Shown here: positions 13,381-38,200 of the stretch, piece after piece
Position numbering within the stretch: position 1 is the stretch's first letter
Layout of the letters: each line of letters begins with the position of its first letter
Source of the DNA: Macrostomum lignano
Taxonomy: Eukaryota
DNA length: 64,000 nt
Direction of reading: 5' to 3'
NCBI GenBank assembly: GCA_002269645.1
Contig: NIVC01001049.1
Span: 62,001 to 126,000 of the forward strand
The notes under the pieces: model-generated
What the model was told of the DNA's origin: nothing
The model's input: the letters and a program-made list of their open reading frames with translations, nothing else
Database searches by the model: none
Made by a program: the position numbers and the translations under genes

Positions 13381-14547
13381 ATGATAAAAATTAACGAAGA
13401 CTTTATCAATGGGATTGGATTGGTTGATAAGGAAGAGACCCTGTAGGATCCAAATAATATCGCGAATATCTATACTATTTTCGTCGGATGCAATCATACT
13501 TACATTGCTTCTTTTAATCGCTTTGAAATCCATACGTACGTTTCAAAATATATAATAGTACTGCTTTATCAACCCCCTTGATCTCAACACACTCTCTCAA
13601 ATGCATACTGCTTTGAGCGCAGGAATACAGCTCTGAAAACTACTGAAATATTCATTTAATCTTTCAACTTTCTAATGACTTTTTTATTCTCCTCGGAGTA
13701 TAGCGGATGATTGGTTGGATAATCTGATGTGTCTAAGTGCTCTTTTTTTCCAGATCCTCATAAACATCCTGAGTAATCACAGAAAACAGCATGCGGTGAG
13801 TCACTTGCAATTGACAACTGTTCCAATTCTTTGCAATAACTTTGCAATAGCAATCGTAGATTAATATTGGTTGCATAAAACGTGTATCATATTTCTGGGA
13901 AATACTGCCTCCCTCTCTCGGACGCCGGACGGCAGCTCTGACTGGTTGACCTGGGGGGTCGCAGCGTCCCAACAGGTTGGCTGTAGGCGGGCGCTCCCGA
14001 TGAAGGGGCGCAGAACAACTGCATTTCTCACCAGAAGCCAAATTCAACAAATTCCAGTTCCATGTTTTCGTTTCAAGTCAGTTATGCTGTCAGATAATTT
14101 CAGCAATGTTCTATCGGTAGATGTAGATAGCCGTCATAATCGTGAGTTATTACTTTATGCTGTTGAAACCAGCTGTGAGCCTTAAGTGCTAATTTAATAT
14201 TTGATACGTTCTAGAGGCTTGGCAAGGCTGCCCAGCGCTTATGGGAAAAATCCGACCTTCTGGCAGAATTATGGAAAATTTTGACGACGTCCGGAGGGCT
14301 TGCGACTTGGTTCTTGTTTGAGCAGGAGCGCGACAAAAAGTGAGCCCGGGCTCTTGGCTTTCATGTGCCTGCGTTCTGGCGCGAATATCGGGGGGGGGGG
14401 GTTCTCCGCGCGAAAAATGGCAATTGGTATTCCTACTGTTAGTAGTAAGATGCCTGGACAAGATTTTTCATACGACACACGGCCAAGGAAAGGCAGAGGT
14501 CCGGAGCCAGGGTCACTGTAAGAGGCTTCCATATAGTGCTCGTGTAT

Positions 14548-14612
14548 TGAGGCCAAGCGCAGATTCGAACCCGGGACCCATCTGGGGCTTCGCTAACCAC
14601 TTTCACAAAGCA
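14548..14612 (-). mobile_element. tRNA-derived SINE head or tRNA pseudogene fragment
   Basis: Minus strand AAGTGGTTAGCG ... CCCGGGTTCGAATCTG gives A-box-like and B-box motifs. No complete cloverleaf. Confidence 0.4.
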
Positions 14613-14784
14613 AATAATTCCAAGGCACATCGTAACGGTGGAAGGAGTCACGGCCTAGCGTTTCTCTGTGAACTGTTTATTTGAAAAAAAACTTGTGGTA
14701 GTACTCAAATTATCAGAATGAGAACTCAGAAATGATAAAGCGAAGCCGGGTCACCTGTCCATTGCCAGGTAGTAGCCAGCCGGG

Positions 14785-16311: not shown

Positions 16312-16480
16312 CTGATGAAGCGGAGAGGCTGATTCACTCTCTGATGGAGCGGAGAGGCTGATTCACTCTCTGATGGAGCGGAGAGGCAGGTTCACTCTCT
16401 GATGGAGCGGAGAGGCAGGTTCACTCTCTGATGGAGCAGAGAGGCTGATTCACTCTCTGATGGAGCAGAGAGGCTGATTC
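16302..16480. repeat. 29-bp tandem repeat, 6 copies, abutting the ankyrin ORF 5' end
   Basis: Unit TTCACTCTCTGATGGAGCGGAGAGGCTGA. Confidence 0.9.
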
Positions 16481-16569
16481 AAGCAGCATTCAGCAAGATT
16501 CAATCAGTGTGCAATCTAATAATTCATGTGTCAATCCACAGTGTATTCTGTGGTACAATCTGAACACCG

Positions 16570-16757
16570 ATTCACTCAGTGAGCAATCTGATCACAAATT
16601 CACCCAGTGAGCAATCTGATCACGATTCACTCAGTGAGCAATCTGATCACAAATTCACCCAGTGAGCAATCTGATCACGATTCACTCAGTGAGCAATCTG
16701 ATCACAGATCTTCACTCAGTGAGCAATCTGAGCACAAATCTTCACTCAGTGAGCAAT
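16570..16757. repeat. Tandem repeat with CAGTGAGCAATCTGATCAC core
   Basis: About 6-7 near-identical units. Confidence 0.85.
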
Positions 16758-16998
16758 CCCTGATAAAGTCGAATTTATGCATTTTGCATGCTGCATGCAA
16801 ATTTCGTTATGAAAGAGTTTCTCACGAAGATTTTTCTCTCGAAAATATTTCGAAATTGTCACTGTGTTGAGCAGACTGAAATTATTGATTCGGTACATGC
16901 CTGCACATTCGGTACGATGCGGATCCCCCCGAATCGATCGAGCTTCAACTTCGACTCGACACCGTTTTGCATCTCCCAAGCCGCTCACCCAGCCAGCA

Positions 16999-17517
16999 AT
17001 GTCACTCTCCCATCTCACAGCCGCCGCCGCCCTGCTGCTCCTCTCCACTGCAGGCACCGGCTTCGCCTACAGGGAGTCCATGAAAGTGAACGGCCTGCCG
17101 GGGGATGTGATTTACACCTTCACCACAGTCCTGCGGCGCATGAGATTCACCTGTGGCGACACGCTGGCCGAAAGACTGTTCGATGCGGCATTCATCCGGT
17201 TCCCCCACAACTCCGTGACGGTGGTGGTCTTCGACACGATCTGGGGCCCCGACGGCAGCCACTTCTCACCTTGCCGCAGCTTCCAGTTCCAGTTCCAGAA
17301 CGGGGGCAAAAAATGCAGCTTCATCGTCTCTATTGGCCTTGAAAGATGGAAGTCGGGCGGCCGGAACAATCGGGATCTGCACACCCAGCTGGAGCGCGCC
17401 AGGGACACCTTCGCTGCCAGTGGAAGGCCGCTGACAGCAGCCAAGCAGGTTCTCGATAGCATGGACCTGCAGGCTGACTGCAGCAGCATCAGCATGCTCG
17501 GGGAAGTCAAAGAGTAA
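16999..17517 (+). CDS. Intronless secreted protein of unknown family (172 aa; frame continues past the stop to 17649)
   Basis: ATG 16999, signal peptide MSLSHLTAAAALLLLSTAGTGFA, Cys-containing mature part, GC-rich codon usage, AATAAA at 17734. Confidence 0.7.
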   Translation: MSLSHLTAAAALLLLSTAGTGFAYRESMKVNGLPGDVIYTFTTVLRRMRFTCGDTLAERLFDAAFIRFPHNSVTVVVFDTIWGPDGSHFSPCRSFQFQFQNGGKKCSFIVSIGLERWKSGGRNNRDLHTQLERARDTFAASGRPLTAAKQVLDSMDLQADCSSISMLGEVKE

Positions 17518-19454: not shown

Positions 19455-20555
19455 TGTGTCTCTGCGTCCTTGGTGTCTGTGTGTCCTTGGTGCCTGTGTG
19501 TCCTTGGTGCCTGTGTGTCCTTGGTGTCTGTGTGTCCTTGGTGTCTGTGTGTCCTTGGTGTCTGTGTGTCCTTGGTGTCTGTGTGTCCTTGGTGTCTGTG
19601 TGTCCTTGGTGTCTGTGTGTCCTTGGTGTCTGTGTGTCCTTGGTGCCTGTGTGTCCTTGGTGTCTGTGTGTCCTTGGTGTCTGTGTGTCCTTGGTGCCTG
19701 TGTGTCCTTGGTGTCTGTGTGTCCTTGGTGCCTGTGTGTCCTTGGTGCCTGTGTGTCCTTGGTGTCTGTGTGTCCTTGGTGTCTGTGTGTCCTTGGTGTC
19801 TGTGTGTCCTTGGTGTCTGTGTGTCCTTGGTGCCTGTGTGTCCTTGGTGTCTGTGTGTCCTTGGTGTCTGTGTGTCCTTGGTGTCTGTGTGTCCTTGGTG
19901 TCTGTGTGTCCTTGGTGCCTGTGTGTCCTTGGTGTCTGTGTGTCCTTGGTGTCTGTGTGTCCTTGGTGCCTGTGTGTCCTTGGTGTCTGTGTGTCCTTGG
20001 TGCCTGTGTGTCCTTGGTGCCTGTGTGTCCTTGGTGTCTGTGTGTCCTTGGTGTCTGTGTGTCCTTGGTGTCTGTGTGTCCTTGGTGTCTGTGTGTCCTT
20101 GGTGTCTGTGTGTCCTTGGTGCCTGTGTGTCCTTGGTGTCTGTGTGTCCTTGGTGTCTGTGTGTCCTTGGTGTCTGTGTGTCCTTGGTGCCTGTGTGTCC
20201 TTGGTGTCTGTGTGTCCTTGGTGTCTGTGTGTCCTTGGTGTCTGTGTGTCCTTGGTGTCTGTGTGTCCTTGGTGTCTGTGTGTCCTTGGTGTCTGTGTGT
20301 CCTTGGTGCCTGTGTGTCCTTGGTGCCTGTGTGTCCTTGGTGTCTGTGTGTCCTTGGTGTCTGTGTGTCCTTGGTGCCTGTGTGTCCTTGGTGCCTGTGT
20401 GTCCTTGGTGTCTGTGTGTCCTTGGTGTCTGTGTGTCCTTGGTGTCTGTGTGTCCTTGGTGTCTGTGTGTCCTTGGTGTCTGTGTGTCCTTGGTGCCTGT
20501 GTGTCCTTGGTGTCTGTGTGTCCTTGGTGTCTGTGTGTCCTTGGTGTCTGTGTGT
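19455..20555. repeat. 17-bp minisatellite
   Basis: Unit CCTTGGTGTCTGTGTGT; explains the five ORFs between 19403 and 20724. Confidence 0.95.
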
Positions 20556-21139: not shown

Positions 21140-24100
21140 TCACCCTCTGCCGCTCATGCGGAACTGCACAGCCAGGACTTTTGCATCGGGGCTGCCGGCC
21201 AGGGCGGAGGATTCGGCCGGAACGGCGGTGGAGTTGAAGAGGCGGCACTCGACCTTCGATCTTGTCCGCTGCTCCACGGACAGCAGGCTGGCTGATGTGG
21301 CCGAGAAGGCTGGCTTCACGTCCTGAGCGCTGAGCTCGTTGCACCCTGCAACTGAAATTTGCAGCGGGGAGAGGCCTGTATTGATGCCACCAGAGGCGCC
21401 AGCACCAGAGGCGCCAGCACCAGAGGCGCCAGCACCAGAGGCGCCAGCACCAGAGGCGCCAGCACCAGAGGCGCCAGCACCAGAGGCGCCAGCACCAGAG
21501 GCGCCAGCACCAGAGGCGCCAGCACCAGAGGCGCCAGCACCAGAGCACCCACTACTCACCAGCGTAGACGTCAACCTCGCAGAAGTTGAAGTAGTTCTGA
21601 GTGCTGGCGGTGAGGCCTGTGCGGTTCTTGTACAGGGCCAGGTAGCGGCCGGACACCGGCTGGGAGCAGGTGAGAGGGATCGGGTTGGTGGCGTCGGTCG
21701 GCACCCCGGTCCAGTAGGAGCAGCGGATGAACAAGCTTTGGTCGAAGCTGGACCACACCGCCTGGTTGGATGATATGCCTGAGAATATCATGGGGAATTT
21801 CATCTGGTGAATTGCATTCTGGGGAATTTTATCTGGAGAATTGTGTACTCTGTGGGTCGCGCAGATTCTAAGGAATTGCATTTGTAGGAATTTTCATCTG
21901 GAATTGTATCCGGGGAAGTGCATCTGGGGGAATTGCAACTGGGGAATCGCATCTAAGGGAATTTTATCCGGGGAATTGCATCTGGGGAATCGCATCTAAG
22001 GGAATTTAATCCGCGGAATTGCATATGGGGGAATTGTATCTGGGAATTGCATCTGGGGGAATTGTGTCTGGGGAATTGTATATGGGGGAATTGTATCTGG
22101 GAATTGCATATGGGGGGAATTGTATCCGGGGAATTGCATATGGGGGAATTGTGTCTGGGGAATTGTATCCGGGGAATTGCATCTGGGGGAATTGTATCTG
22201 GGAATTGCATATGGGGGGAATTGTATCCGGGGAATTGCATATGGGGGAATTGTATCTGGGAATTGCATATGGGGGGAATTGTATCCGGGGAATTGCATAT
22301 GGGGGAATTGTGTCTGGGGAATTGTATCCGGGGAATTGCATCTGGGGGAATTGTATCTGGGTGAATCACATCCGGGTAATCGCTGACTCACCGAGGCTAA
22401 CCTGGGTGAAGCGGATCTCATCAGAGGCATCTAGACGGTTCCACACCTGGACACTAGCGATGCGGTATTCCTGTTGCAGGTCCAGCATCCACCAGGGCAC
22501 GGCGTCAGCACCAGACATTGATTGTGTCTCAATTGTCAGGTGATTGTGTCTCAGTTGTCAGGTGATTGTATCTCAGTTGTCAGGTGATTGTGTCTCAGTT
22601 GTCAGGTGATTGTGTCTCAGTTGTCAGGTGATTGTGTCTCAGTTGTCAGGTGATTGCGTCTCAGTTGTCAGGTGATTGTGTCTCAGTTGTCAGGTGATTG
22701 TATCTCAGTTGTCAGGTGATTGTGTCTCAGTTGTCAGGTGATTGTGTCTCAATTGTCAGGTGATTGCGTCTCAGTTGTCAGGTGATTGTGTCTCAGTTGT
22801 CAGGTGATTGTGTCTCAATTGTCAGGTGATTGCGTCTCAGTTGTCAGGTGATTGTGTCTCAGTTGTCAGGTGATTGTGTCTCAATTGTCAGGTGATTGCG
22901 TCTCAGTTGTCAGGTGATTGTGTCTCAATTGTCAGGTGATTGTATCTCAGTTGTCAGGTGATTGCGTCTCAGTTGTCAGGTGATTGTGTCTCAGTTGTCA
23001 GGTGATTGTATCTCAGTTGTCAGGTGATTGTGTCTCAGTTGTCAGGTGATTGTGTCTCAATTGTCAGGTGATTGCGTCTCAGTTGTCAGGTGATTGTGTC
23101 TCAGTTGTCAGGTGATTGTGTCTCAATTGTCAGGTGATTGCGTCTCAGTTGTCAGGTGATTGTGTCTCAGTTGTCAGGTGATTGTGTCTCAATTGTCAGG
23201 TGATTGCGTCTCAGTTGTCAGGTGATTGTGTCTCAGTTGTCAGGTGATTGTGTCTCAGTTGTCAGGTGATTGTGTCTCAGTTGTCAGGCGATTGTGTCTC
23301 AGTTGTCAGGTGATTGTGTCTCAGTTGTCAGGAAGTGTGTCTCAGTTGTCAGGTGATTGTGTCTCAGTTGTCAGGTGATTGTGTCTCAATTGTCAGGTGA
23401 TTGTGTCTCCAGTTGTCGGGTGATTGTGTCTCAATTGTCAGGTGATTGTGTCTCAGTTGTCAGGTGATTGTGTCTCAGTTGTCAGGTGATTGTGTCTCAG
23501 TTGTCGGGTGATTGTGTCTCAATTGTCAGGTGATTGTGTCTCAGTTGTCAGGTGATTGTGTCTCAGTTGTCAGGTGATTGTGTCTCAGTTGTCAGGTGAT
23601 TGTGTCTCAGTTGTCAGGTGATTGTCTCAGTTGTCAGGTGATTGTGTCTCAATTGTCAGGCGATTGTATCTCAGTTGTCAGGTGATTGTGTCTCAATTGT
23701 CAGGTGATTGCGTCTCAGTTGTCAGGTGATTGTGTCTCAGTTGTCAGGTGATTGTGTCTCAGTTGTCAGGTGATTGCGTCTCAGTTGTCAGGTGATTGTG
23801 TCTCAGTTGTCAGGTGATTGTGTCTCAATTGTCAGGTGATTGCGTCTCAGTTGTCAGGTGATTGTGTCTCAGTTGTCAGGTGATTGTGTCTCAGTTGTCA
23901 GGTGATTGTGTCTCAGTTGTCAGGCGATTGTGTCTCAGTTGTCAGGTGATTGTGTCTCAGTTGTCAGGAAGTGTGTCTCAGTTGTCAGGTGATTGTGTCT
24001 CAGTTGTCAGGTGATTGTGTCTCAATTGTCAGGTGATTGTGTCTCCAGTTGTCGGGTGATTGTGTCTCAATTGTCAGGTGATTGTGTCTCAGTTGTCAGG

Positions 24101-24797
24101 TGATTGTGTCTCAGTTGTCAGGTGATTGTGTCTCAGTTGTCGGGTGATTGTGTCTCAATTGTCAGGTGATTGTGTCTCAGTTGTCAGGTGATTGTGTCTC
24201 AGTTGTCAGGTGATTGTGTCTCAGTTGTCAGGTGATTGTGTCTCAGTTGTCAGGTGATTGTCTCAGTTGTCAGGTGATTGTGTCTCAATTGTCAGGCGAT
24301 TGTATCTCAGTTGTCAGGTGATTGTGTCTCAGTTGTCAGGTGATTGTGTCTCAGTTGTCAGGTGATTGTGTCTCAGTTGTCAGGTGATTGTCTCAGTTGT
24401 CAGGTGATTGTGTCTCAATTGTCAGGCGATTGTATCTCAGTTGTCAGGTGATTGTGTCTCAGTTGTCAGGTGATTGTGTCTCAGTTGTCAGGTGATTGTG
24501 TCTCAGTTGTCAGGTGATTGTGTCTCAGTTGTCAGGTGATTGTCTCAGTTGTCAGGTGATTGTGTCTCAATTGTCAGGCGATTGTATCTCAGTTGTCAGG
24601 TGATTGTGTCTCAGTTGTCAGGTGATTGTGTCTCAATTGTCAGGTGATTGTGTCTCAGTTGTTAGGTGATTGTGTCTCAATTGTCAGGCGATTGTGTCTC
24701 AGTTGTGAGGTGATTTCTGAAAGTGATGAAGTTCAATCTCACCTCCCAAGCAGCCACAGGAGCTCAGAATGACTAGAAGCGCCGCTTGTTTTTCCAT
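21140..24797 (-). CDS. Secreted F-type lectin (fucolectin / F5-8 type C) gene, apparently interrupted
   Basis: Exon 24743-24797 is a signal peptide (MEKQAALLVILSSCGCLG|GTGAGA). Exon about 22392-22525 reads PWWMLDLQQEYRIASVQVWNRLD|GTGAGT. Exon 21560-21778 reads RCSYW..TC.QPVSGRYL..NFCEVDVY|GTGAGT. Last exon is 21140-21375. Splice phases of the last three exons agree. Confidence 0.8.
21388..21545. repeat. 15-bp intronic repeat
   Basis: Unit CCAGAGGCGCCAGCA, 10-11 copies. Confidence 0.95.
21880..22362. repeat. GGGGAATTG(C/T)AT composite intronic repeat
   Basis: Seen directly in the lectin intron. Confidence 0.9.
22520..24712. repeat. 22-bp satellite, about 100 copies
   Basis: Unit ATTGTGTCTCAGTTGTCAGGTG. 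Confidence 0.95.
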
Positions 24798-25167: not shown

Positions 25168-27110
25168 AAGCCAATTGAGAATCAATACCCCTGCCAATTG
25201 AGAATAAATACCCCTGCCAATTGAGAATCAATACCCCTGCCAATTGAGAATCAATACCCCTGCCAATTGAGAATCAATACCCCTGCCAATTGAGAATAAA
25301 TACCCCTGCCAATTGAGAATCAATACCCCTGCCAATTGAGAATCAATACCCCTGCCAATTGAGAATCAATACCCCTGCCAATTGAGAATAAATACCCCTG
25401 CCAATTCAGAATAAATACCCCTGCCAATTGAGAATCAATACCCCTGCCAATTGAGAATCAATACCCCTGCCAATTGAGAATAAATACCCCTGCCAATTGA
25501 GAATAAATACCCCTGCCAATTGAGAATAAATACCCCTGCCAATTGAGAATAAGTACCCCTGCCAATTGAGAATCAATACCCCTGCCAATTGAGAATCAAT
25601 ACCCCTGCCAATTGAGAATAAATACCCCTGCCAATTGAGAATCAATACCCCTGCCAATTGAGAATAAATACCCCTGCCAATTCAGAATAAATACCCCTGC
25701 CAATTGAGAATCAATACCCCTGCCAATTGAGAATCAATACCCCTGCCAATTGAGAATAAATACCCCTGCCAATTGAGAATAAATACCCCTGCCAATTGAG
25801 AATAAATACCCCTGCCAATTGAGAATAAGTACCCCTGCCAATTGAGAATCAATACCCCTGCCAATTGAGAATCAATACCCCTGCCAATTGAGAATAAATA
25901 CCCCTGCCAATTGAGAATAAATACCCCTGCCAATTGAGAATAAGTACCCCTGCCAATTGAGAATCAATACCCCTGCCAATTGAGAATCAATACCCCTGCC
26001 AATTGAGAATAAATACCCCTGCCAATTGAGAATAAATACCCCTGCCAATTGAGAATAAATACCCCTGCCAATTGAGAATAAGTACCCCTGCCAATTGAGA
26101 ATCAATACCCCTGCCAATTGAGAATCAATACCCCTGCCAATTGAGAATAAATACCCCTGCCAATTGAGAATAAATACCCCTGCCAATTGAGAATAAGTAC
26201 CCCTGCCAATTGAGAATCAATACCCCTGCCAATTGAGAATCAATACCCCTGCCAATTGAGAATAAATACCCCTGCCAATTGAGAATAAATACCCCTGCCA
26301 ATTGAGAATAAATACCCCTGCCAATTGAGAATAAGTACCCCTGCCAATTGAGAATCAATACCCCTGCCAATTGAGAATCAATACCCCTGCCAATTGAGAA
26401 TCAATACCCCTGCCAATTGAGAATAAATACCCCTGCCAATTGAGAATAAGTACCCCTGCCAATTGAGAATCAATACCCCTGCCAATTGAGAATCAATACC
26501 CCTGCCAATTGAGAATAAATACCCCTGCCAATTGAGAATAAATACCCCTGCCAATTGAGAATCAATACCCCTGCCAATTGAGAATCAATACCCCTGCCAA
26601 TTGAGAATAAGTACCCCTGCCAATTGAGAATAAATACCCCTGCCAATTGAGAATCAATACCCCTGCCAATTGACAATCAATACCCCTGCCAATTGAGAAT
26701 CAATACCCCTGCCAATTGAGAATCAATACCCCTGCCAATTGAGAATAAATACCCCTGCCAATTGAGAATAAATACCCCTGCCAATTGAGAATCAATACCC
26801 CTGCCAATTGACAATCAATACCCCTGCCAATTGAGAATCAATACCCCTGCCAATTGAGAATCAATACCCCTGCCAATTGAGAATCAATACCCCTGCCAAT
26901 TGACAATCAATACCCCTGCCAATTGAGAATCAATACCCCTGCCAATTGAGAATCAATACCCCTGCCAATTGACAATCAATACCCCTGCCAATTGAGAATC
27001 AATACCCCTGCCAATCGACAATCAATACCCCTGCCAATTTAGAATAAATACCCTTGCCAATTGAGAATAAATACCCCCTGTCAATCGAGAATAAATACCC
27101 CTGCCAATCG
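25168..27110. repeat. 23-bp satellite, about 84 copies
   Basis: Unit CCAATTGAGAAT(C/A)AATACCCCTG. Confidence 0.95.
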
Positions 27111-27353
27111 AGAATCCCCCACAGCATGAGGGGTCGCAAAAAAGAACCAAACAAAAAGCGAGACACAAAAATGCCGATTTCGCAGCCTGTGCTCAGCACA
27201 CAGGCGGTTCAAGCGAGTTCGAACTTAAGCAACTCAAGCAATTAATTATGATCAATAACTATATTGACACTGGGCGGCACGGCCACCCAGCTCTGAATAG
27301 AATAGGCAAAAACAGAAAAGCAAAATTTAAACAAATTCAAGCAGATGCGGGCC

Positions 27354-30159
27354 TCAGTCTAACAGATCCCCAGCCTCATCTCCAGACTCCTCAGCATCAT
27401 CGTCATCATCCTCATCCTCCTCGCCGCTCTCTTCATCCGCAGCTGCAGCCTCCGCCGTCGCCGCCGCCGCGTCGCCCGCCGCCTCGCCGGCGCCCAGCAG
27501 CTCCGCCAGGTCGGCCGCCTCCAGCAAGCCGGGCAGGCCGGGCCGCGCCCGCTCGAAGAAGCCGCAGACGGCGCGGCAGTCGCGCAGAAGGAGCTCGCCG
27601 GCGCGGGGATGGCCGCGGTCCGTCCAGCGGGACAGGCCGGTCAGCCACACGGAGCCGCGCCACCACAGCAGGTGGCGGCCGTCCAGGTTGCCGTGCACCA
27701 GCCTGGGATGCGGTGGGGGAATTTTGGGAATTTCTCATGCCTGGGGAATTCGGGGATTCTCATGCTTGGGAATTCGGGGATTTCTCATGCTTAGGAATTC
27801 GGGGATTTCTCATGCTTGGGAATTCGGGGATTTCTCATGCTTGGGAATTCGGGGATTTCTCATGCTTGGAGTATAATGGCAGTATTCAGCAGGCAGCCTG
27901 GGCTCGGTGAATGAGAGATCACTCCCCACCCACCTGGCCTGTCGCAGCGTGCTCCGCAGGGCAGTCACGGTCAGCTCCCAGGCCTTCATCCAGTCTGCCT
28001 CGCTCAGCAGGCCGCCTTCCAGGCAGTCGGCCAGGGAGGGCGCCGCGACGCCGTCGGCCCCGACGAGCTCCGTCAGCAGGAGGTGGCGCCGCAGCATCAG
28101 TGGGGCCGGCGAGGCGACACCCGCCCGGCGAAGTCGGCGAAGGCCGCGCAGCTCGCGCAGGCAGCGGGCGCGTGGGGAGCCGCGCGGGCTGCACGGCGCC
28201 TCCAGCTGAGACTCCGCGGACGTCGCTGCTGCCGCTGCCGCGGAGGAGAGCCGCGACCTGGAGAGCCGCCGGAAGACCTTGACGACCACATCGGGGGGCA
28301 TCGGACGGCCGCCCTTGCAGCGGGAGTTCGAGTCGCAGCGGGCGTGGATCAGCTGGAAATTGGGGCGGTTGCAGTGAGATTTGGCTATTGGGATTTGGCT
28401 ATTTGGATTTTGCTATTGGGATTTTGCTATTGAGATTTTGCTATTGAGATTTTGCTATTGAGATTTTGCTATTGGGATTTTTCTATTTGGATTTTGCTAT
28501 TGGGATCTTGCTACTGCGATCTTGCTATTGGGATTTCGCTATTGGGATGCACCAGTGGGGATGTCAGGCGGACATGAAGGCTCCCACCGCTCACCAGGCT
28601 CTGGTCGCCCACTTTCAGCACCTCGCCGACCTCCGCCAGCCGCCGGATTGTCACAAGGCGCTGCAGCAGCCGGCGGGTCCGCTCGTCCAGCTGCTGCCGC
28701 CTCTGCTGCTCCAGCTGCTCCTGCTGGCTCAGCTGCTGCTGGCTGTCCCGCTGCCTCCTGGCCGCCGACCGCCGCTCCTCCTGTGCCGCGTGCACCTTCA
28801 GGCTGTTGTAGACGCGGTTGTCCAGCTGCAGGCCGTCGGTGTCGCCGGTGCGGAAGCCGGCGTGCCCGAAGCCCGCCATTCGCTCCGCGTTGCGCCGGCC
28901 GCAGATCTCGGCGTCGTGCTTCGTCAGCAGGTCGGCGCCGCGGCCGGAGACGCCGCGCGAGTTGAAGCTGCGCGCTGGCCCGGGCGGCAGCAGCGGCGGC
29001 TCCACGGTGGTGGCCGCCGGGTCCTCCTCGGAGTCCGAGGCCGGGGCGCCCGTCGTGTCCCGGCGCAGGTGGTTGGACAGCGTCACCCGCACCTGCGGCG
29101 GGGAGAGGGGGTCTGGGGTCACCTGGGGTCATCAATGATTAGCTGGGCTGAGATAAGGTTATTACTGATTTTTTAGGTCAACTGAGGTCACTAGAGATTG
29201 TCTGGGGTCAACTGAGCTCACTAGAGATTGTCTGGAGTCAACTGAGGTCACTAGAGATTGTCTGGGATCAACTGAGGTCACTAAAGATTGTCTGGGGTCA
29301 ACTGAGCTCACTAGAGATTGTCTGGGGTCAACTGAGGTCACTAGAGATTGTCTGGGATCAACTGAGGTCACTAGAGATTGTCTGGGATCAACTGAGGTCA
29401 CTAGAGATTGTCTGGGATCAACTGAGGTCACTAGAGATTGTCTGGGGTCAACTGAGGTCACTAGAGATTGTCTGGGATCAACTGAGGTCACTAGAGATTG
29501 TCTGGGGTCAACTGAGGTCACTAGAGATTGTCTGGGGTCAACTGAGGTCACTAGAGATTGTCTGGGATCAACTGAGGTCACTAGAGATTGTCTGGGGTCA
29601 ACTGAGGTCACTAGAGATTGTCTGGTAACAACTGAGGTCACTAGAGATTGTCTGGGGTCAACTGAGGTCACTAGATGTAAGAGAATCTAAGAGAATGCCT
29701 GCGTCAGCCCTTAAACCATGCCAATATTCCCAAGCAGCCCATCCAGTCAGCCAGCAATTTGACTCTCACCTTCTGGTTGCCGTTCAGCTTGGCCTCGCTG
29801 AGTCGCACCTGTCTGTCAAACTCCCTGTCAAATTCCTGCTGCAGCATCAGCGCCAGCACAAAGTCACTGTCAGACTCGCCGCCCTGACCAGCCGGACTCG
29901 AACTCGCGACCTCGTGCTCGTCTTTTGCCAGCCGACTTTCTTCACCATTGCCGCTTTGAACCTCGACTGGTGCCAGAGCCTGCAGCTTGGCGGCCAGCCG
30001 GAGGTCCTGGCGGAGCTGCTGCTCGCGCTCGTGGTCGGCCAGCTGCTCGGACATCACCGAAGCCAGCCCGGACGTCGGCGGCCGCGCCACCGCTGCCCAA
30101 CTAGCGACCGGAGGCGGCGGCGACTTGCCGCTGGACTCGGGGGTCGCCTGGCTTGAATT
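27354..30159 (-). CDS. RIOK3: RIO kinase 3-like protein, 4 exons, predicted pseudokinase
   Basis: Exons about 29770-30159, 28595-29092, 27934-28352 and 27354-27702, with GT/AG sites and matching phases. RIOK3-specific motifs: LASVMSEQLA, SDFVLALMLQQEFDREFD, TKHDAEICGRRNAERM, NRVYNSLKVHAAQEERRS, HPRAGELLLRDCRAVCGFF. Confidence 0.9.
27715..27870. repeat. 25-bp intronic repeat
   Basis: Unit GGGGATTTCTCATGCTTGGGAATTC. Confidence 0.9.
28375..28550. repeat. 14-bp intronic repeat
   Basis: Unit CTATTG(A/G)GATTTTG. Confidence 0.9.
29165..29675. repeat. 30-bp intronic repeat
   Basis: Unit GGTCAACTGAGGTCACTAGAGATTGTCTGG. Confidence 0.95.
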
Positions 30160-30929
30160 CTGCAGAAATGTGGCCGGCCCCGCAGCTGGTGACACTTGCC
30201 GATATGTATCGAAAATAACTTTGCTGATTAAAAATTCCTAAACTACTGAAATCGGACTAACATGAGTAGTATACAAAATAAAAGAAGGCGGCGAATGAAG
30301 CAATTATTTAGCGAATAATAGGATTTATTGTCCGGACAATTTCAAGCAAAACAACGGAAAGAAAATCGCGTGGGAACGCGGATAAGTTAATAAAATAAAA
30401 TCGGATTTCGATTGCACTTAGTTTTGCTTTACTGTCAGTAGGCGAAGCGAATATTGCAGACAAAATGTGTTTGACTAAAATAAAAATGACGCAATAGGCG
30501 CGCTAAGCAATATTAATTAGTAACAATGGTAAAAATAAATTAAATAGATGGCATTCAATGCTGCATTACCGGTAATTTGGTAAATTTACACGATTCAGAA
30601 GATGGAGAGTTTCAGACTCACAGGTAAAAGCACTGAGACAACACCGACAGCATGCAGAGAGATTCATCCGCAGAGTGAAACAGGACTAGTGGAAAAGATT
30701 TGCGGCTAGAAGTGCAAGGTAAATAATTACATAGTAACATAGGTAATAAATATTGAACTAATGAGCCACAACAGAAATAATAGTATGATTATACATCGAA
30801 ATCATTTTAACATGCAGCATAATGCAGGCGTAGAAAATCTGACAGTGTGGCCAGGAAAATTCATAAGGAATTTACAAAGCGATGAAAAACATCGATTAAC
30901 AGGTAAAATAGGTCAGCATGCTAATAGGC

Positions 30930-31780: not shown

Positions 31781-34758
31781 TCACTCGTGCTTGAAGTGCT
31801 TGCTGGCCGAGTCCGACGGCTTCCTGCAGTGGCCGCCACCACCTCCGCCGACGCCGCCCGCCTCCTCGGCAGCCGCGGCGGCCGGCAGGTTGGCCAGCGG
31901 GTCGGCGGGCTGCAGCGGCGCGGGCTCGTGGTAGAACTTGCTCAGGATGGACTCTGGAGTCTGCGTGTACTTGATCAGCATTGATGGGGAGCGAAACAGG
32001 TACAGCAGCTTGGCGAACAGCTCCTCCTCCAGTTCGAGCTCCTGGGACTCGCGGACCAAGTAGATGTCGTGCAGCAGAGCCAGGAGCCGATCCACGTGCG
32101 GCATGTCCACGTACATGACCAGGTAGTGGCGGGGGATGATGCCCGCCCGCAGCACCCGCGCGATGGAGATCACGAACACGGACAGGATGCCGTACATGCC
32201 CACCTTCTGGATGGCCTGTGGGACAGGGGGTGGGGGCGGTTTGGCGTTGGAGTGGCGTTGTCATAGCAACAGCACAAGTGACATCATAGCAGTTGAATAC
32301 GAAACAGTATTCTACACTGCATAGCGACCACAATGGAAACCACTGCATAGTAACCAGAATAGCAGCCACTGCATAGCAACCAACATAGAAGCTACTGCAT
32401 AGCAACCAGCATAGAAACCACTGCATAGCAACCAGCCTAAAAACCACTCCATGGCAACCAGCATGGAAACCACTGCATAGCAACCAGCATGGAAACCACT
32501 GCATAGCAACCAGCCTAGAAGCCATAGCAACCAGCATAACAACCGCTGCATAGCAACCACTGGATAGCAACAGCATAGCAACTATAATAGCACTCCTCTA
32601 ACCTGAATAAGCCGGTTCTCAGACTTGGACCGCTCCGAGAAGAACACCAGCCGCAGAATGTTGTGCATGTCGGCCTGGCCCACCTGCCTGCCCGTGCGGT
32701 TCATCGGGCACAGAAAGTTGCCGCTGTAGATGTCCTGCAGCTCCCACCAGGACACGCTGTTCTCGTCAGATCGTAGGTCAGCCTGAAGAGCACCAATTCA
32801 GAGTTGCTTTATTGACTCAGGGGATTAGTGAATGCTTTTCAATGTAGATGTGAGCAGCAGTGATCACAGGTGAGACCCAATGACACCGGTGAATGGTGCC
32901 GAGATCACAGGTGAGACCCAATGACACCGGTGAATGGAATGGAGATAACAGGTGAGACCCAATGACACTAGTGAATGGAATGGAGATCACAGGTGAGACC
33001 CAATGACACCGGTGAATGGAATGGAGATCACAGGTGAGATCCAATGACACCGGTGAATGGTGCCAAGATCACAGATGACTCGAGATGAGACCCAATGACA
33101 ACGGTGAATGGAATGGAGATCACAGATGACTCGAGATGAGACCCAATGACAACGGTGAATGGAATGGAGATCACAGGTGAGACCCAATGACAACGGTGAA
33201 TGGAATGGAGATCACAGGTGAGACCTAATGACAACGGTGAATGGAATGGAGATCACAGGTGAGACCCAATGACACCGGTGAATGGAATGGAGATCACAGG
33301 TGAGACCTAATGACAACGGTGAATGGAATGGAGATCACAGGTGAGACCCAATGACAACGGTGAATGGAATGGAGATCACAGGTGAGACCCAATGACACCG
33401 GTGAATGGCACCGAGATCAACAGGTGAGACCTAATGACAACGGTGAATGGAATGGAGATCACAGGTGAGACCCAATGACACCGGTGAATGGCACCGAGAT
33501 CAACAGGTGAGACCCAATGACACCGGTGAATGGCGAGAGCACAGGTGAGCAACCGGTGTCACCTGAATGTCAATCCTGCTGGTGTTGAGCTTCTTAGCGG
33601 GCAGGCTGTTGCTCAGCGGCTCCATGCCACCAGAGGGGTCGCTGCTGAGCAGGAGGAAGCGGTCGCCAATCTGGTGGAAGGTGACGGAGGCGTTGGCGGC
33701 CGAGCTGTTGAGCACCCGGATGAGGCTCTCCCGCACAGGGGTGCCGAACCCAAGCTCCCGTTCGAACACTTTCTTCCGCGAGACGCCGCCGTCCTTGGAG
33801 CGGAGGCACTCGAGCTTGAAGAAGAGCCGCACAGTGCTGCGGTTGTTGCCGAGCTCCTTGCTGAGGGCGCGGCGCGACGGCGGCGTGATGGTCCACAGCA
33901 CGCTGGACATGCCGTCGAATTCCACAATGTAGGCGGTGGTGGACTGCAGCAGGTGGCCCATGCGCTTGTCCGCCTCCTGGGGAGCGGGTAGGGGAGTTGA
34001 AGGAGCCGGCTAAGGCCTAAGGATAAAATTCTCCCCAGCATTAGATCTAGAGATATAATAAAATCAGTTTTAGCATGTTGTTGCAGAGTTAAATAGGAGC
34101 GATGCTCAAACTGCTCTACTATAAGTAGGTCTGTAATGCGTTTTATCAGTCTCAGTTTTAAATAGCAGTAAACAGTTGACGAGAAATAAAGCATTTTATG
34201 AGAATTATAAGCGCACGCACTCTGTCAAATGAGGCTCCATCTCAGATATAAATTGTTGCTATGCTCAGCCTGAATATAAGCTATAGGCGCAGTTATAACA
34301 CAATGCCATTGTTACCTGGTGGTAGGCGGGCCTGCCTAGGCGAAAGGGGTCTGACTGCTACGGGATGGAGGGGGTGGGGGAAGCTGCGGAGCTGCATCGG
34401 TACTGTTTTTCATTATTCAGCACAAGGCGGATGCGACATGCAGATGGCAGATTGGCTCAACTGGGTTTGTGAAAATTAAGCAGCAGAAATAAAAATTCAA
34501 GGCGGCTCAATCTGTGCGCTCACGAGCGGCCTGCGGATCTTATGACAGCTCATCTCAGCGTGAAACGACCCGGATCTCAATATGTAAAACATGTTAATGC
34601 GGCCTGCTTTTTCCAGAAAAGCTACCAATTATCAAATTCTAGGAAATTAAAAATTAAGCCTGTTAGTGTGCTTGTCTGTCTGTCTGTCTTAGTGTCTGTC
34701 TCTGTCTGTGTCTGTCTTAGTGTCTGTCTCTGTCTTAGTGTCTGTCTGTCTGTCTTAC

Positions 34759-34791
<33 letters not shown>

Positions 34792-34794
34792 TAC

Positions 34795-34887
<93 letters not shown>

Positions 34888-34926
34888 TACTGTCTGTCTG
34901 TCTGTCTGTCTTACTGTCTGTCTTAC

Positions 34927-34987
<61 letters not shown>

Positions 34988-35026
34988 TACTGTCTGTCTT
35001 ACTGTCTGTCTGTCTGTCTGTCTTAC

Positions 35027-35071
<45 letters not shown>

Positions 35072-35074
35072 TAC

Positions 35075-35139
<65 letters not shown>

Positions 35140-35142
35140 TAC

Positions 35143-35179
<37 letters not shown>

Positions 35180-35182
35180 TAC

Positions 35183-35227
<45 letters not shown>

Positions 35228-38200
35228 TACTGTCTGTCTGTCTGTCTGTCTGTATGTCTGCCCACCCGCAGGCACGCACCTCGCCCTTCTTAGCGAAGCA
35301 GTCGTGCACGAAGGTCCGGTTCTCCTGCGTGAAGCCCTTCACGCTGGTTGTCCGCAGGGTGTACAGCGGTGTAAAGGAGCCGATGGACAGCTCAGAGGTG
35401 CACGAGGTCACGTGATTGATCTCCAAGAAGACGTTGCTCATCACGGAGAACCAGAGCACGGGCGCCCAGATGCAGGCCACGATGAGGGCAATGAGCCAGA
35501 ATCCCGGACAGTACTTGTAGCAAGGTGTCCGGTTCTTGGCCCGCTCCGTGGGGTAGTCGATCTCGGCCCGGCGCCAGCACTTCGACACGAAGATGACGCT
35601 GTAGATGTCCTCAACCAGCAGCCAGTGGGAGATGCTGAGCGCAGTGTTGGTGAGCATCCAGTCCATGACAGACCGCAGCTCGAACAGGAACGGAATGATG
35701 AGGTAGATCTTGAATGAGAACAGGTTCAGGTAGTTCTGCCGCTTGCAGATGAAGTTGCCAAGGACGCGCGACGGGTAGCCCGAGAGGATCTGATAGGCTG
35801 ACAGGGCGAAGTACACGCACTTGGAGGCGTAGAACATCTTGATCACCCAGCTGCGGGACACGTAATCGGCTCTGCGGGGGCGGCGGGACGGTTAAAAGTA
35901 CATTTCAGACAGGATATTTAAATATCCACTTCATTTCATAGTTTTACCACCGCTACTGAGCTGTGATCAGTAATGGAATTTTGAACCAGTGTTGGGATTA
36001 TTGGGATCAGAGATGGGATTTTGGGATCAGTGATGGGATTATTGGGATCAGTGTTGGGATTGTTGGGATCAGTGATGGGATTATTGGGATCAGTGTTGGG
36101 ATTATTGGGATCAGTGTTGGGATTATTGGGATCAGTGTTGGGATTATTGGGATCAGTGTTGGGATTATTGGGATCAGAGTTGGGATTATTGGGATCAGAG
36201 TTGGGATTACTGGGATCAGTGATGGGATTATTGGGATCAGTGATGGGATTATTGGGATCAGTGTTGGGATTATTGGGATCAGTGTTGGGATTATTGGGAT
36301 CAGTGTTGGGATTATTGGGATCAGTGTTGGGATTATTGGGATCAGAGTTGGGATTATTGGGATCAGAGTTGGGATTACTGGGATCAGTGTTGGGATTACT
36401 GGGATCAGAGTTGGGATTATTGGGATCAGTGTTGGGATTATTGGGATCAGTGATGGGATTATTGGGATCAGAGTTGGGATTATTGGGATCAGTTTTGGGA
36501 TTACTGGGATCAGTGATGGGATTATTGGGATCAGTGTTGGGATTATTGGGATCAGTGTTGGGATTATTGGGATCAGTGATGGGATTATTGGGATCAGTGA
36601 TGGGATTATTGGGATCAGTGATGGGATTATTGGGATCAGTGTTGGGATTATTGGTATCAGTGTTGGGATTATTGGGATCTATCTTGGCATTTTAAGATCA
36701 GAGTTAGGATTGCGGAATCAGAAATAAAGCTCCAACGCTCACGAGGTCATGTAGGGCAGGATGAACTTCAGGTAGACGTGCAGCAAAGTCACATGCAGCA
36801 GGTGAAAGAAGAATTTGCCCCGCCTGGAGCGGGTGAGGAAGAGGCCGCGGTCCACCAGCAGCATGGTGAACTGCACGAACATGGTCAGCGTGAGAGTCAG
36901 CGGGATCTGCGCGAATTGAAGGATTTATTTAGTTATTAAAATGCTTGCATTACTACTTAGCGAGTAGAGCAGCGAGAGCCTCACCTCCTCCTTGGAGATG
37001 TAGGTGATGATGTTCTCGTCCTCGACTCGGCCGGGGCCAGCGAAGCCGGCCGTGTAGCCGAAGAAGATGATGAGCAACGACACGAACTCGCTGATGAACA
37101 TCCAGGAGTACAGGTCCACCCGCACCGAGATGTTCGGGTCCGCGATCTTCTTGAAGAACTCGCGAAACGGATGGCAGGTCAGGCAGCTCAGCAGGCAGGA
37201 GGTCGGGTAGGAGGACTTGGACCGGCGCCCGCTCCGATGCTGGGGGGGGGGAGCGGGAGCTGCTGCTGCCTGTTGCACAATTATCCAACCTCCTACAGCC
37301 ATTCCGCCCTCTCCTACAGCCATTCCGCCCTCTCTCACAACCATTCCGCACATTCTACAGCCATTCCGCCCTCTCCTACAGCCATTCCGCACATTCTACA
37401 GCCATTCCGCCCTCTCCTACAGCCATTCCGCACATTCTACAGCCATTCCGCCCTCTCCTACAGCCATTCCGCACATTCTACAGCCATTCCGCCCTCTCCT
37501 ACTGCCATTCCGCACATTCTACAGCCATTCCGCCCTCTCCTACAGCCATTCCGCACATTCTACAGCCATTCCGCCCTCTCCTACAGCCATTCCGCACATT
37601 CTACGGCCATTCCGCCCTCTCCTACGGCCATTCCGCACATTCTACAGCCATTCCGCCCTCTCCTACAGCCATTCCGCACATTCTACAGCCATTCCGCCCT
37701 CTCCTACAGCCATTCCGCACATTCTACAGCCATTCCGCCCTCTCCTACAGCCATTCCGCCCTCCTCCGAGCGTACAGCCATTTCGCCCACCCTCCTACAA
37801 CCATTCCGCCCTCTCCTACAGCACTCTTCCTACAGCCATTCCGCTCTCTCACTAGAGTCACCCCGCCCTCTGCTACAGCCATTCCGCTCTCTCACTAGAG
37901 TCACCCCGCCCTCTGCTACAGCCATTCCGCTCTCTCACTAGAGTCACCCCAACAGTCACTCCGCCCAAAAACAGTAAATCGCTCTTACCTACAGAAACAG
38001 AAGCCCCCACCCTAACCTACAGACCATCCTCTCCAACACAGCCCTTCAGAATCCAGTACGCCCTGTCAACTCACCCCATCTGCAGCTTCATCAAAGAACT
38101 GCCTGGACCTGTCCAGCCCGTCCTCAGACTCCAGCCCGTCGGTGCTGCCCACTACCGCCTCAGGCGTCAGCGGCGAAGGCGTCGGCGAAGGCGGCACCTG

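What the first reader, a model, noticed from the sequence alone, without database searches (positions are those of the whole stretch)
27354..28352. RIOK3-like gene is an intact pseudokinase
Seen: intact splice sites and frame with a conserved RIOK3 N-terminal region, but the catalytic loop HADLSEYN reads HGNLDGRH (catalytic Asp to Asn, Asn to His) and the metal-binding WLIDVSQ reads WLTGLSR (Asp to Gly). The P-loop reads KVGDQSLL, while the beta-3 Lys (VVVKVF) is kept. An acidic tail is added. Known: both Asp residues are essential for RIO ATPase/kinase activity in pre-40S maturation and stress or immune signalling. Inference: a catalytically dead, scaffold-type RIO3. I know of no described example, and several in-frame substitutions are unlikely to be sequencing errors.
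Basis: partly seen in the sequence, partly recalled or inferred. Interest (0 to 1): 0.75.

Follow-up and report, generated by a model that had tools for sequence, protein, structure and literature searches.

The report
Catalytically dead RIOK3 duplicate in flatworm
The flatworm Macrostomum lignano has a normal RIOK3 gene and also this extra, fast-evolving copy, which has lost every residue needed to use ATP but is still kept intact by selection, so it most likely works as a non-enzymatic binding protein.

Summary
A four-exon gene on the minus strand (27354-30054, all introns GT-AG) encodes a 516-aa protein. Its best solved relative is human RIOK3 (E 2e-57). The P-loop reads KVGDQS, the catalytic loop HGNLDGRH and the metal loop LTGLSR; the beta-3 Lys and alpha-C Glu are kept.

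The window is Macrostomum lignano, and the product is identical to PAA72970.1. Two further syntenic copies (Piezo - this gene - ankyrin) carry the same dead motifs, so these are not sequencing errors.

It is not the animal's only RIOK3. A fully canonical RIOK3 (PAA93645.1 / PAA67553.1) lies elsewhere and is the nearest relative (about 40% identity, NJ bootstrap 200/200, two shared intron positions). The dead copy is therefore a lineage-specific duplicate. It has evolved 2-3 times faster and shifted towards GC-rich codons.

Selection still acts on it. Between copies there are 12 synonymous and 4 non-synonymous differences (omega about 0.15, p <= 0.002), with no exon indels although intron lengths vary widely. 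The N-terminal ubiquitin-binding and linker modules are far better conserved than the RIO domain.

The best reading is a non-enzymatic RIOK3 paralogue, possibly a competitor for ubiquitylated 40S subunits. It is present in databases but undescribed. The acidic tail is ancestral, not added. Interest is moderate.

The parts
27354..30054 (-). Whole coding region of the RIOK3-like pseudokinase gene, from Met-1 to the TGA stop. Four exons, 516 aa.
   Evidence: Gene model. The product is identical to PAA72970.1.
30055..30138 (-). Upstream in-frame codons (ESSGKSPPPPVASWAAVARPPTSGLASV) with no ATG. Probably a coding N-terminal extension that would be supplied with a start codon by the ATG-ending spliced leader.
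   Evidence: The ORF stays open up to 30237. NCBI CDSs are 5'-partial and start here. The stretch resembles the canonical N-terminus (...W..V.P...SL..VMSEQL). The SL ends in ...GCATG. Use of the SL start codon is inferred.
29770..30054 (-). Exon 1: the RIOK3-specific N-terminal region with MIU-type ubiquitin-binding helices. These are MSEQLA...DLRLAAKLQAL at 29974-30054 and DFVLALMLQQEFDRE at 29821-29865.
   Evidence: 13 of 14 positions conserved in at least 8 of 9 canonical RIOK3s are kept. AF2 predicts helices 3-26 and 63-91. The MIU function in human RIOK3 comes from PMC12008924.
29093..29769 (-). Intron 1 (677 nt, GT-AG), mostly a 30-nt minisatellite at 29176-29675.
   Evidence: Its length is 370, 580 and 677 nt in the three loci. 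The position and phase are shared with the canonical paralogue.
28595..29092 (-). Exon 2: linker with the conserved TKHDAEICGRRNAERM (28877-28924) and NRVYNSLKVH helix, the start of the RIO N-lobe, and the degenerate P-loop KVGDQS (28598-28615).
   Evidence: 22 of 28 conserved linker positions are kept.
28353..28594 (-). Intron 2 (242 nt, GT-AG), with a 14-nt minisatellite at 28378-28548.
   Evidence: The position and phase are shared with the canonical paralogue.
27934..28352 (-). Exon 3: RIO N-lobe and hinge. The beta-3 Lys is kept (VVVKVF, 28272-28289). The flexible loop is replaced by a Ser/Ala-rich stretch (28182-28268). The alpha-C Glu is kept (CLRELRGL).
   Evidence: The loop 292-318 has pLDDT below 50.
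27703..27933 (-). Intron 3 (231 nt, GT-AG, phase 2), with a 25-nt minisatellite at 27717-27869.
   Evidence: This intron position is not present in the canonical paralogue.
27354..27702 (-). Exon 4: RIO C-lobe with the dead catalytic loop HGNLDGRH (27672-27695) and dead metal loop WLTGLSR (27627-27647), then an Ala-rich stretch, the acidic tail (27357-27440) and the TGA stop.

Best explanation
This is a Macrostomum-lineage duplicate of RIOK3 that has become a pseudokinase/pseudo-ATPase.

Shown here:
- It arose by DNA-level duplication of the animal's canonical RIOK3, because two intron positions are shared.
- It then evolved 2-3 times faster and moved to GC-rich codon and amino-acid usage.
- It lost the P-loop Lys, the catalytic Asp and Asn, the metal-binding Asp and the RIO flexible loop.
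- It kept an intact frame, its splice sites, a confidently predicted RIO fold, the beta-3 Lys and alpha-C Glu, and especially the RIOK3-specific N-terminal ubiquitin-binding (MIU) helices and linker.
- All three genomic copies remain under purifying selection.

Inferred:
- It can no longer hydrolyse ATP, and probably cannot bind Mg-ATP.
- It acts through binding alone. Its MIU and linker modules would recognise ubiquitin or ubiquitylated 40S subunits as RIOK3 does, but without the ATP-dependent step that commits the subunit to decay.
- It would thus behave like a natural version of the human K290A/D406A mutant, which still binds ubiquitin and associates with 18S rRNA/40S but blocks degradation. 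That makes it a competitor or holder that tunes RIOK3-driven ribosome turnover.
For: Identity and dead motifs.

Same motifs in three loci and in older entries.

Canonical paralogue in the same genome and sister relationship:
- phmmer gives 293 bits to it against at most 183 bits to any other RIOK3.
- Identity is 40% against at most 33% on ungapped columns.
- A 4-residue insertion after the P-loop strand is shared only by the two M. lignano proteins.
- NJ bootstrap support is 200/200.
- Introns 1 and 2 are at identical positions and phase.

Acceleration and composition:
- 76-97 unique changes against 29-37 for the canonical copy, chi2 16-37.
- GC3 0.87 against 0.61, and GARP residues 37% against 26.5%.

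Selection:
- 12 synonymous against 4-5 non-synonymous differences between copy types, omega 0.13-0.19, p <= 0.002 even with CpG-weighted mutation models.
- 3 of 13 differences are non-synonymous within the RIO-domain exons, p 0.002.
- There are zero exon indels, while intron lengths differ by up to about 2.8-fold.

Modular conservation: 35 of 42 conserved positions are kept in the N-terminus plus linker, against 37 of 78 in the RIO domain (Fisher p 1.7e-4).

Fold: the AF2 RIO domain has pLDDT 80-95. Foldseek top hits are RIOK3 8zdc/8zdb, and RIOK1 4otp superposes at rmsd 2.1 A.

Expression (indirect): the NCBI models derive from a genome-guided RNA-seq transcriptome.

Human precedent: K290A/D406A RIOK3 still binds ubiquitin and co-precipitates 18S rRNA/40S. 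It fails to recruit TUT7/DIS3L2 or support 40S decay, and it raises uS3/uS5 ubiquitylation.
Against: - No activity, nucleotide-binding, ubiquitin-binding or ribosome-binding data exist for this protein. The mechanism is extrapolated from human RIOK3.
- The first MIU has lost its second hydrophobic position (LAxxL -> LADHE), so ubiquitin binding may be altered.
- The selection test rests on only 16-19 substitutions between very similar copies (dS 0.027).
- No orthologue was found in any other species, so long-term retention is not demonstrated.
- Some of the divergence could be non-adaptive GC-driven drift.
- The AF2 model used an alignment dominated by canonical RIOK3s, so it is biased towards the RIO fold.
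- Expression level and tissue are unknown.
Confidence: 0.6

Rival explanations
1. It is a transcribed duplicate on its way to becoming a pseudogene. After duplication the copy became redundant, lost its active site and is drifting, pushed by GC-biased substitution, with no function of its own.
For: - It evolves 2-3 times faster than its paralogue.
- Every catalytic element is lost.
- The flexible loop and the C-terminal extension are replaced by low-complexity Ala/Ser/Arg sequence.
- Composition is strongly skewed to GC-rich codons.
- It was seen only in M. lignano.
Against: - Omega is about 0.15 with p <= 0.002 under several mutation models, including within the RIO-domain exons.
- There is no stop or indel in 1.6 kb in any of three copies, despite about 60% amino-acid divergence from the parent and hypervariable introns.
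- A random 72%-GC sequence would stay open over 516 codons with probability of about 1e-4 (own estimate from base composition).
- The N-terminal and linker modules are selectively conserved.
Confidence: 0.12
2. It is a non-enzymatic adaptor with a new job unrelated to ribosomes, for example signalling or ubiquitin-chain reading. Vertebrate RIOK3 is reported to have comparable ATPase-independent adaptor roles.
For: - The ubiquitin-binding MIU2 and the linker are conserved.
- Kinase-independent roles of vertebrate RIOK3, such as competition for caspase-10 DEDs independent of ATPase activity, are cited in PMC4894443.
- The RIO domain surface is heavily remodelled.
Against: - Nothing in the sequence points to a new partner.
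- The linker that is conserved across RIOK3s is retained, and the RIO-domain exons are still constrained. Both fit the ancestral binding target.
- Flatworms are reported to lack caspase-10 and the TNF-R1 death-domain pathway.
Confidence: 0.18
3. It is still an active ATPase or kinase that uses a non-canonical active site, as some proteins first labelled pseudokinases turned out to be.
For: - The beta-3 Lys (K286), the alpha-C Glu (E328) and the catalytic-loop His (H404) are kept.
- Asn replaces the catalytic Asp and His replaces the Asn, so polar groups remain in the pocket.
Against: Four independent elements are lost together: P-loop Lys->Asp and Glu->Gln, catalytic Asp->Asn, Asn->His, and metal-binding Asp->Gly, plus the flexible loop. 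In about 150 RIO representatives these positions are D/N/D in 153 of roughly 160 aligned sequences. The human double mutant K290A/D406A is already inactive.
Confidence: 0.05
4. It is an assembly or annotation artefact: a mis-assembled or error-ridden copy of the canonical RIOK3.
For: Older UniProt entries from the ML2 assembly (P0002-P0004, P0013) are visibly frameshifted versions of this gene.
Against: - Three separate contigs of the improved assembly give the same uninterrupted CDS with the same dead motifs, and differ mostly at synonymous sites.
- The gene is only about 40% identical to the canonical copy.
- It sits in a different, conserved neighbourhood (Piezo/ankyrin against kinesin/adenylate kinase).
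Confidence: 0.01

Closest known systems
Canonical RIOK3 of Macrostomum lignano (PAA93645.1 / PAA67553.1, UniProt A0A267F1C6)
   Same: - It is the sister gene (NJ 200/200).
- It has the same domain order: MIU helices, linker, RIO domain, acidic tail.
- Introns 1 and 2 are at identical positions.
- Both share lineage-specific features: a 4-residue insertion after the P-loop strand, LLWWR and QKVRVTL.
   Different: - The canonical copy keeps ATGKES, AIKVFKTT, HADYSEYN and IIDVSQ, the flexible loop and the C-terminal FDxFF segment. The window gene has lost all of these.
- GC3 is 0.61 against 0.87.
- The canonical gene has 5 exons (third and fourth introns at other positions), the window gene has 4.
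- The genomic neighbourhoods differ.
Human RIOK3 (PDB 8zdb/8zdc, bound to ubiquitylated 40S) and its engineered K290A/D406A mutant
   Same: - It is the best solved relative by sequence (E 1.9e-57) and by predicted fold.
- The N-terminal MIU region and linker are conserved.
- Loss of the catalytic Asp mirrors the engineered degradation-defective mutant, which still binds ubiquitin and co-precipitates 18S rRNA/40S.
   Different: - Identity is about 30%.
- The natural protein keeps the beta-3 Lys but additionally loses the P-loop Lys, the Asn, the metal Asp and the flexible loop.
- No binding or functional data exist for it.
Pseudokinases in general (kinase-fold proteins lacking catalytic residues that act as scaffolds, competitors or allosteric regulators)
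   Same: It is a paralogue of an active enzyme. The fold is retained, the catalytic motifs are degraded, purifying selection is maintained, and there is a plausible competitor role towards the active paralogue.
   Different: It belongs to the atypical RIO family, whose members act mainly as ATPases on ribosomal particles. No RIO3 pseudokinase is described in the searchable literature.
Other RIO-family proteins with altered catalytic residues: Papaver somniferum RIO1-like XP_026430189.1, Rhamnusium bicolor KAJ8965125.1, and the unnamed Logan protein P0157
   Same: They are RIO-domain proteins deviating at the catalytic Asp/Asn or the metal Asp in the alignment.
   Different: - Each deviates at fewer positions.
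- They are from unrelated lineages and were not examined further.
- The two named ones are not annotated as RIOK3: one is RIO1-like, the other a generic Ser/Thr kinase entry.

Membership tests
RIO kinase superfamily (Pfam PF01163) | RIO domain detectable by profile, with a RIO-type fold | tested here: met
   Pfam RIO1 scores 79 bits against a cut-off of 22. The AF2 RIO domain has pLDDT 80-95, and Foldseek gives RIOK3 and RIOK1 as top hits.
RIO kinase superfamily (Pfam PF01163) | ATP-binding P-loop STGKE(S/A) | tested here: not met
   It reads KVGDQS, with Lys->Asp and Glu->Gln.
RIO kinase superfamily (Pfam PF01163) | Beta-3 Lys and alpha-C Glu | tested here: met
   K286 in VVVKVF and E328 in LRELRGL are kept.
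RIO kinase superfamily (Pfam PF01163) | Catalytic loop HxDLSExN (catalytic Asp and Asn) | tested here: not met
   It reads HGNLDGRH, with Asp->Asn and Asn->His.
RIO kinase superfamily (Pfam PF01163) | Metal-binding loop (I/L)D(V/F)(S/A)Q | tested here: not met
   It reads LTGLSR, with Asp->Gly.
RIO kinase superfamily (Pfam PF01163) | ATPase or autophosphorylation activity | not testable with these tools
   This needs recombinant protein.
RIOK3 subfamily | RIOK3-specific N-terminus (MSEQLA..., DxxLAxxLQxEFDxE MIU helices) and linker (TKHD..GRRNA..NxVYNxLK) | tested here: met
   35 of 42 positions conserved in at least 8 of 9 canonical RIOK3s are kept. MIU1 is partly altered.
RIOK3 subfamily | Closer to RIOK3 than to RIOK1 or RIOK2, and nested within RIOK3 in a tree | tested here: met
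   PDB hits: RIOK3 at E 2e-57 against RIOK1 at 4e-18. In the NJ tree it is sister to M. lignano RIOK3 inside the RIOK3 clade, 200/200.
RIOK3 subfamily | Conserved C-terminal extension after the RIO domain (LFxxxTGL...FDxFF) | tested here: not met
   It is replaced by an Ala-rich stretch before the acidic tail.
Pseudokinase / pseudoenzyme | Homologous to an active enzyme family but lacking residues essential for catalysis | tested here: met
Pseudokinase / pseudoenzyme | Maintained by selection, i.e. not a pseudogene | tested here: met
   Omega is 0.13-0.19 with p <= 0.002. The ORF is intact and has no indels in three loci. Power is limited because only 16-19 substitutions are available.
Pseudokinase / pseudoenzyme | Expressed as protein | tested here: inconclusive
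   The annotated models come from an RNA-seq-guided transcriptome. No read counts or proteomics were available.

The most novel reading that the evidence does not exclude
A naturally ATPase-dead RIOK3 paralogue serves as an endogenous antagonist or 'holder' of ubiquitylated 40S subunits. By competing with the active RIOK3 it would set how many ribosomes are destroyed during starvation, degrowth or regeneration in a flatworm. This would be a genetically encoded brake on the RNF10-RIOK3 ribosome-decay pathway.
Probability: 0.2. Interest if true: 0.7.

Novelty: new variant of a known kind. Interest (0 to 1): 0.45.

Why it matters
RIO proteins are ancient and near-universally conserved ATPases. 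In about 150 representatives the catalytic Asp/Asn/Asp triad is almost invariant. A selected, catalytically dead RIOK3 beside an active one would therefore be an unusual natural experiment.

Recent human work shows that RIOK3 reads ubiquitin marks on 40S subunits and needs its ATP site to commit them to decay. The ATP-site mutant still binds ubiquitin and co-precipitates 18S rRNA/40S but blocks the pathway. The flatworm paralogue is a ready-made natural analogue of that mutant, in an animal where RNAi and transgenesis work and where growth, degrowth and regeneration depend on ribosome supply.

The locus also corrects the literature. A 2015 survey concluded that all flatworms, M. lignano included, had lost riok-3. 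In fact this basal flatworm has both a canonical RIOK3 and a dead duplicate, each in three copies in the assembly.

Tried and rejected
- **Orthologues in other species.** Three word-index searches found only M. lignano sequences above the level of ordinary RIOK3s: the full protein, a profile of both paralogues, and a version trimmed of low-complexity sequence. The exhaustive representative search gave the same result. The word-index searches were clearly swamped by low-complexity candidates, with only 7-8 hits each. A search for 'RIO kinase' with 'pseudokinase' found no paper whose title or abstract concerns a RIO pseudokinase; the hits were not read in full.\n- **Regional GC isochore as the cause of the divergence.** This is only partly supported. 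The neighbouring Piezo exons also have GC3 of 0.83-0.90, but introns and flanks are 35-51% GC. The GC enrichment is therefore exon-specific and remains unexplained.\n- **dS inflated by CpG hypermutability, creating a false low omega.** 11 of 17 exon differences are at CpG sites, and unique non-coding sequence shows no differences. CpG-weighted neutral expectations still reject neutrality.\n- **Retrocopy origin.** Rejected, because two introns are shared with the parent gene.
Full report
**What is there**

The region holds a four-exon gene on the minus strand. Exons are 30054-29770, 29092-28595, 28352-27934 and 27702-27354. All three introns are GT..AG, and the frame is continuous for 516 codons plus TGA. 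The finding's coordinates cover only exons 3 and 4.

Each intron consists largely of a minisatellite, with units of 30, 14 and 25 nt. The exons are 72% GC with GC3 of 0.87. The introns and flanks are 35-51% GC.

**Checking the observation**

Pfam finds a RIO domain (E 3.9e-22). The best solved relative is human RIOK3 in its 40S complexes (8zdb chain p, E 1.9e-57), far ahead of RIOK1 (4e-18).

| Element | Canonical | Window gene |
|---|---|---|
| P-loop | STGKES | KVGDQS |
| Beta-3 strand | AIKVF | VVKVF (Lys kept) |
| Alpha-C Glu | present | kept |
| Catalytic loop | HADLSEYN | HGNLDGRH |
| Metal loop | LIDVSQ | LTGLSR |

In addition, the RIO flexible loop is replaced by a Ser/Ala-rich stretch. 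The conserved C-terminal extension is replaced by an Ala-rich stretch. The acidic tail is not an addition, because the canonical M. lignano paralogue and other invertebrate RIOK3s have one too.

**Source and copies**

The window is Macrostomum lignano. The product is identical to PAA72970.1. Two 99%-identical proteins (PAA78666.1, PAA69189.1) and UniProt A0A1I8ISG3 belong to the same cluster. The three NCBI loci are syntenic, in the order Piezo, this gene, ankyrin-repeat gene.

All copies carry the same dead motifs, which excludes sequencing error. Older UniProt entries (P0002-P0004, P0013) are frameshifted renderings of the same gene from an earlier assembly.

**A canonical RIOK3 exists in the same genome**

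The exhaustive representative search puts one protein far above all other RIOK3s: P0012, at 293 bits and about 40% identity, against at most 183 bits and about 31% for the rest. P0012 is PAA93645.1 of M. lignano. It clusters with PAA67553.1, which UniProt names Ser/Thr kinase RIO3. It has every canonical motif: ATGKES, AIKVFKTT, HADYSEYN and IIDVSQ.

Its gene (locus L004) has five exons and GC3 of 0.61, and lies between kinesin and adenylate-kinase genes. Introns 1 and 2 sit at exactly the same positions and phase as in the window gene, so the duplication was DNA-based and not a retrocopy.

The two M. lignano proteins share a 4-residue insertion that other RIOK3s lack. They are sisters in 200 of 200 NJ bootstraps.

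It also contradicts Breugelmans et al. 2015. That paper reported no riok-3 in any flatworm, and named M. lignano explicitly.

**How the duplicate evolved**

Relative to eight outgroup RIOK3s, the dead copy has 76-97 unique changes against 29-37 in the canonical copy (Tajima chi2 16-37). GC rose at all three codon positions (0.77/0.51/0.87 against 0.65/0.41/0.61). Gly+Ala+Arg+Pro rose to 37% from 26.5%, and Phe/Tyr/Met/Ile/Asn/Lys fell to 7.6% from 19%. Several active-site replacements are A/T-to-G/C codon changes: Asp->Gly, Glu->Gly, Tyr->Arg, Ile->Thr and Gln->Arg. Relaxed constraint combined with GC pressure probably shaped the loss.

Conservation is modular. Positions conserved in at least 8 of 9 canonical RIOK3s are retained as follows (Fisher p 1.7e-4 for N-terminus plus linker against RIO domain):

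| Region | Positions kept |
|---|---|
| N-terminal MIU region | 13 of 14 |
| Linker | 22 of 28 |
| RIO domain | 37 of 78 |

**Is it still under selection?**

The window/L003 copy type differs from the L001/L002 type at 17-19 exon positions. Within the annotated CDS, 12 differences are synonymous and 4-5 are non-synonymous. Omega is 0.15-0.21 by Nei-Gojobori.

Unexpectedly, 511 nt of unique non-coding sequence show no substitution. Eleven of the 17 exon differences lie in CpG dinucleotides, and the exons are CpG-rich (o/e 0.99 against 0.24 in introns). I therefore recomputed the neutral expectation with transition and CpG weights up to 100-fold. The expected non-synonymous fraction stays at 0.64-0.70 against 0.25 observed, giving p <= 0.002 and omega of 0.13-0.19. 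Within the RIO-domain exons alone, 3 of 13 differences are non-synonymous (p 0.002).

Exons have no indels in any copy. The minisatellite introns differ greatly in length (370/580/677, 383/354/242 and 647/613/231 nt), and all splice sites are kept. The data set is small but consistently indicates purifying selection, including on the dead domain.

**Fold and expression**

AlphaFold2 with a 10-sequence alignment gives a confident RIO domain (pLDDT 80-95 for residues about 230-470, excluding the loop 292-318). It also predicts N-terminal helices at 3-26 and 63-91. Foldseek returns the RIOK3-40S structures first, and RIOK1 4otp superposes at 2.1 A over 240 columns. This model is biased by the canonical homologues in its alignment.

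The NCBI gene models come from a genome-guided RNA-seq transcriptome that cuts transcriptional units at spliced-leader sites. The 'g2' tags and the same-strand Piezo gene upstream suggest that the gene is the second cistron of a trans-spliced unit. This is indirect evidence of expression.

The ORF stays open for 61 codons upstream of Met-1 without an ATG. The nearest 28 of those codons resemble the canonical N-terminus. The M. lignano spliced leader ends in ATG and would be in frame with an acceptor at about 30135. This is an inference.

**Mechanism**

In human cells RIOK3 binds 40S subunits ubiquitylated on uS3/uS5 through its N-terminal MIU motifs. It needs its ATP site to recruit TUT7 and DIS3L2 and trigger 18S decay. 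The K290A/D406A mutant still binds ubiquitin and co-precipitates 18S rRNA. It causes no decay and raises uS3/uS5 ubiquitylation (PMC12008924; bioRxiv 2026.04.26.720784).

The flatworm paralogue keeps MIU2, an MIU-like DLRLAAKLQ helix, and the linker. It lacks the catalytic machinery. The most economical reading is a binding-only RIOK3 that competes with, or holds substrates away from, the active paralogue. The loss of catalytic residues, the paralogy, the selection and the modular conservation are shown here. Loss of ATP binding or hydrolysis, ubiquitin or 40S binding, and the antagonist role are inferred.

The rivals are listed with their evidence in the rival explanations: a drifting duplicate, a new non-ribosomal adaptor role, residual non-canonical activity, and an assembly artefact.

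**Novelty and rarity**

The protein is deposited but unnamed. I found no paper on it or on any RIO3 pseudokinase. Among about 150 RIO representatives, only three non-M. lignano proteins deviate at the catalytic Asp/Asn or the metal Asp: a poppy RIO1-like protein, a beetle protein, and one unnamed Logan protein. No orthologue of the dead copy was found outside M. lignano.

**Verdict**

This is a real, intact, selected and catalytically degenerate RIOK3 paralogue, which makes it a new variant of a known kind. Interest is moderate. It would rise if binding to ubiquitylated 40S and antagonism of ribosome decay were shown.

Noticed in passing
window 27703-27933, 28353-28594, 29093-29769 (also L001-L003): All three introns are built mainly of minisatellites (25-, 14- and 30-nt units). 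Array length differs strongly among the three genomic copies (for example 231, 613 and 647 nt), while the exons have no indels.
   Followed up: partly
window 22519-24715 and 25170-27116: Two very large, very regular tandem arrays lie just downstream of the gene: a 22-nt unit with about 100 copies and a 23-nt unit with about 85 copies. More arrays lie elsewhere, for example a 17-nt unit at 20000-20555 and a TGTC array at 34673-35260.
   Followed up: no
window ~31780-58600, minus strand: A large Piezo-type mechanosensitive channel gene (Pfam THU_Piezo1, Piezo_TM1-24) lies directly upstream on the same strand. The 'g2' locus tags suggest that Piezo and the RIO3-like gene share one transcriptional unit resolved by SL trans-splicing.
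   Followed up: partly
window 30055-30237, minus strand: The ORF is open upstream of Met-1 with no ATG, and the deposited CDSs are 5'-partial. The upstream 28 codons look like the RIOK3 N-terminus. The M. lignano spliced leader ends in ATG and could supply the start codon if the acceptor is at about 30135.
   Followed up: partly
window exons against introns of the gene; L001/L002: Exons differ between copies more than unique non-coding sequence does (17 of 1692 nt against 0 of 511 nt). 11 of the 17 exon differences are at CpG sites, and CpG o/e is 0.99 in exons against 0.24 in introns. This hints at CpG hypermutability or gene-body methylation and remains unexplained.
   Followed up: partly
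L004 (NIVC01000023.1:529768-555004), gene at 8001-17237: A canonical RIOK3 gene exists in M. lignano, in three annotated copies. This contradicts the published statement that flatworms, including this species, lost riok-3 (PMC4894443).
   Followed up: yes
window 2974-5844, minus strand: A 957-aa uninterrupted ORF (GC3 0.50, unlike its GC3-rich neighbours) appears to contain internally repeated segments and has a weak Pfam CBM_20 (starch-binding) hit. Its nature is unknown.
   Followed up: no
window 14788-16362, minus strand: A 525-aa ORF made of ankyrin repeats corresponds to the downstream neighbour seen at the syntenic loci L001 and L002.
   Followed up: partly
proteins P0102 (Papaver somniferum RIO1-like), P0142 (Rhamnusium bicolor), P0157 (Logan, unnamed): These are other RIO-family proteins whose aligned catalytic Asp/Asn or metal-binding Asp is replaced. 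They are possible further natural RIO pseudoenzymes.
   Followed up: partly
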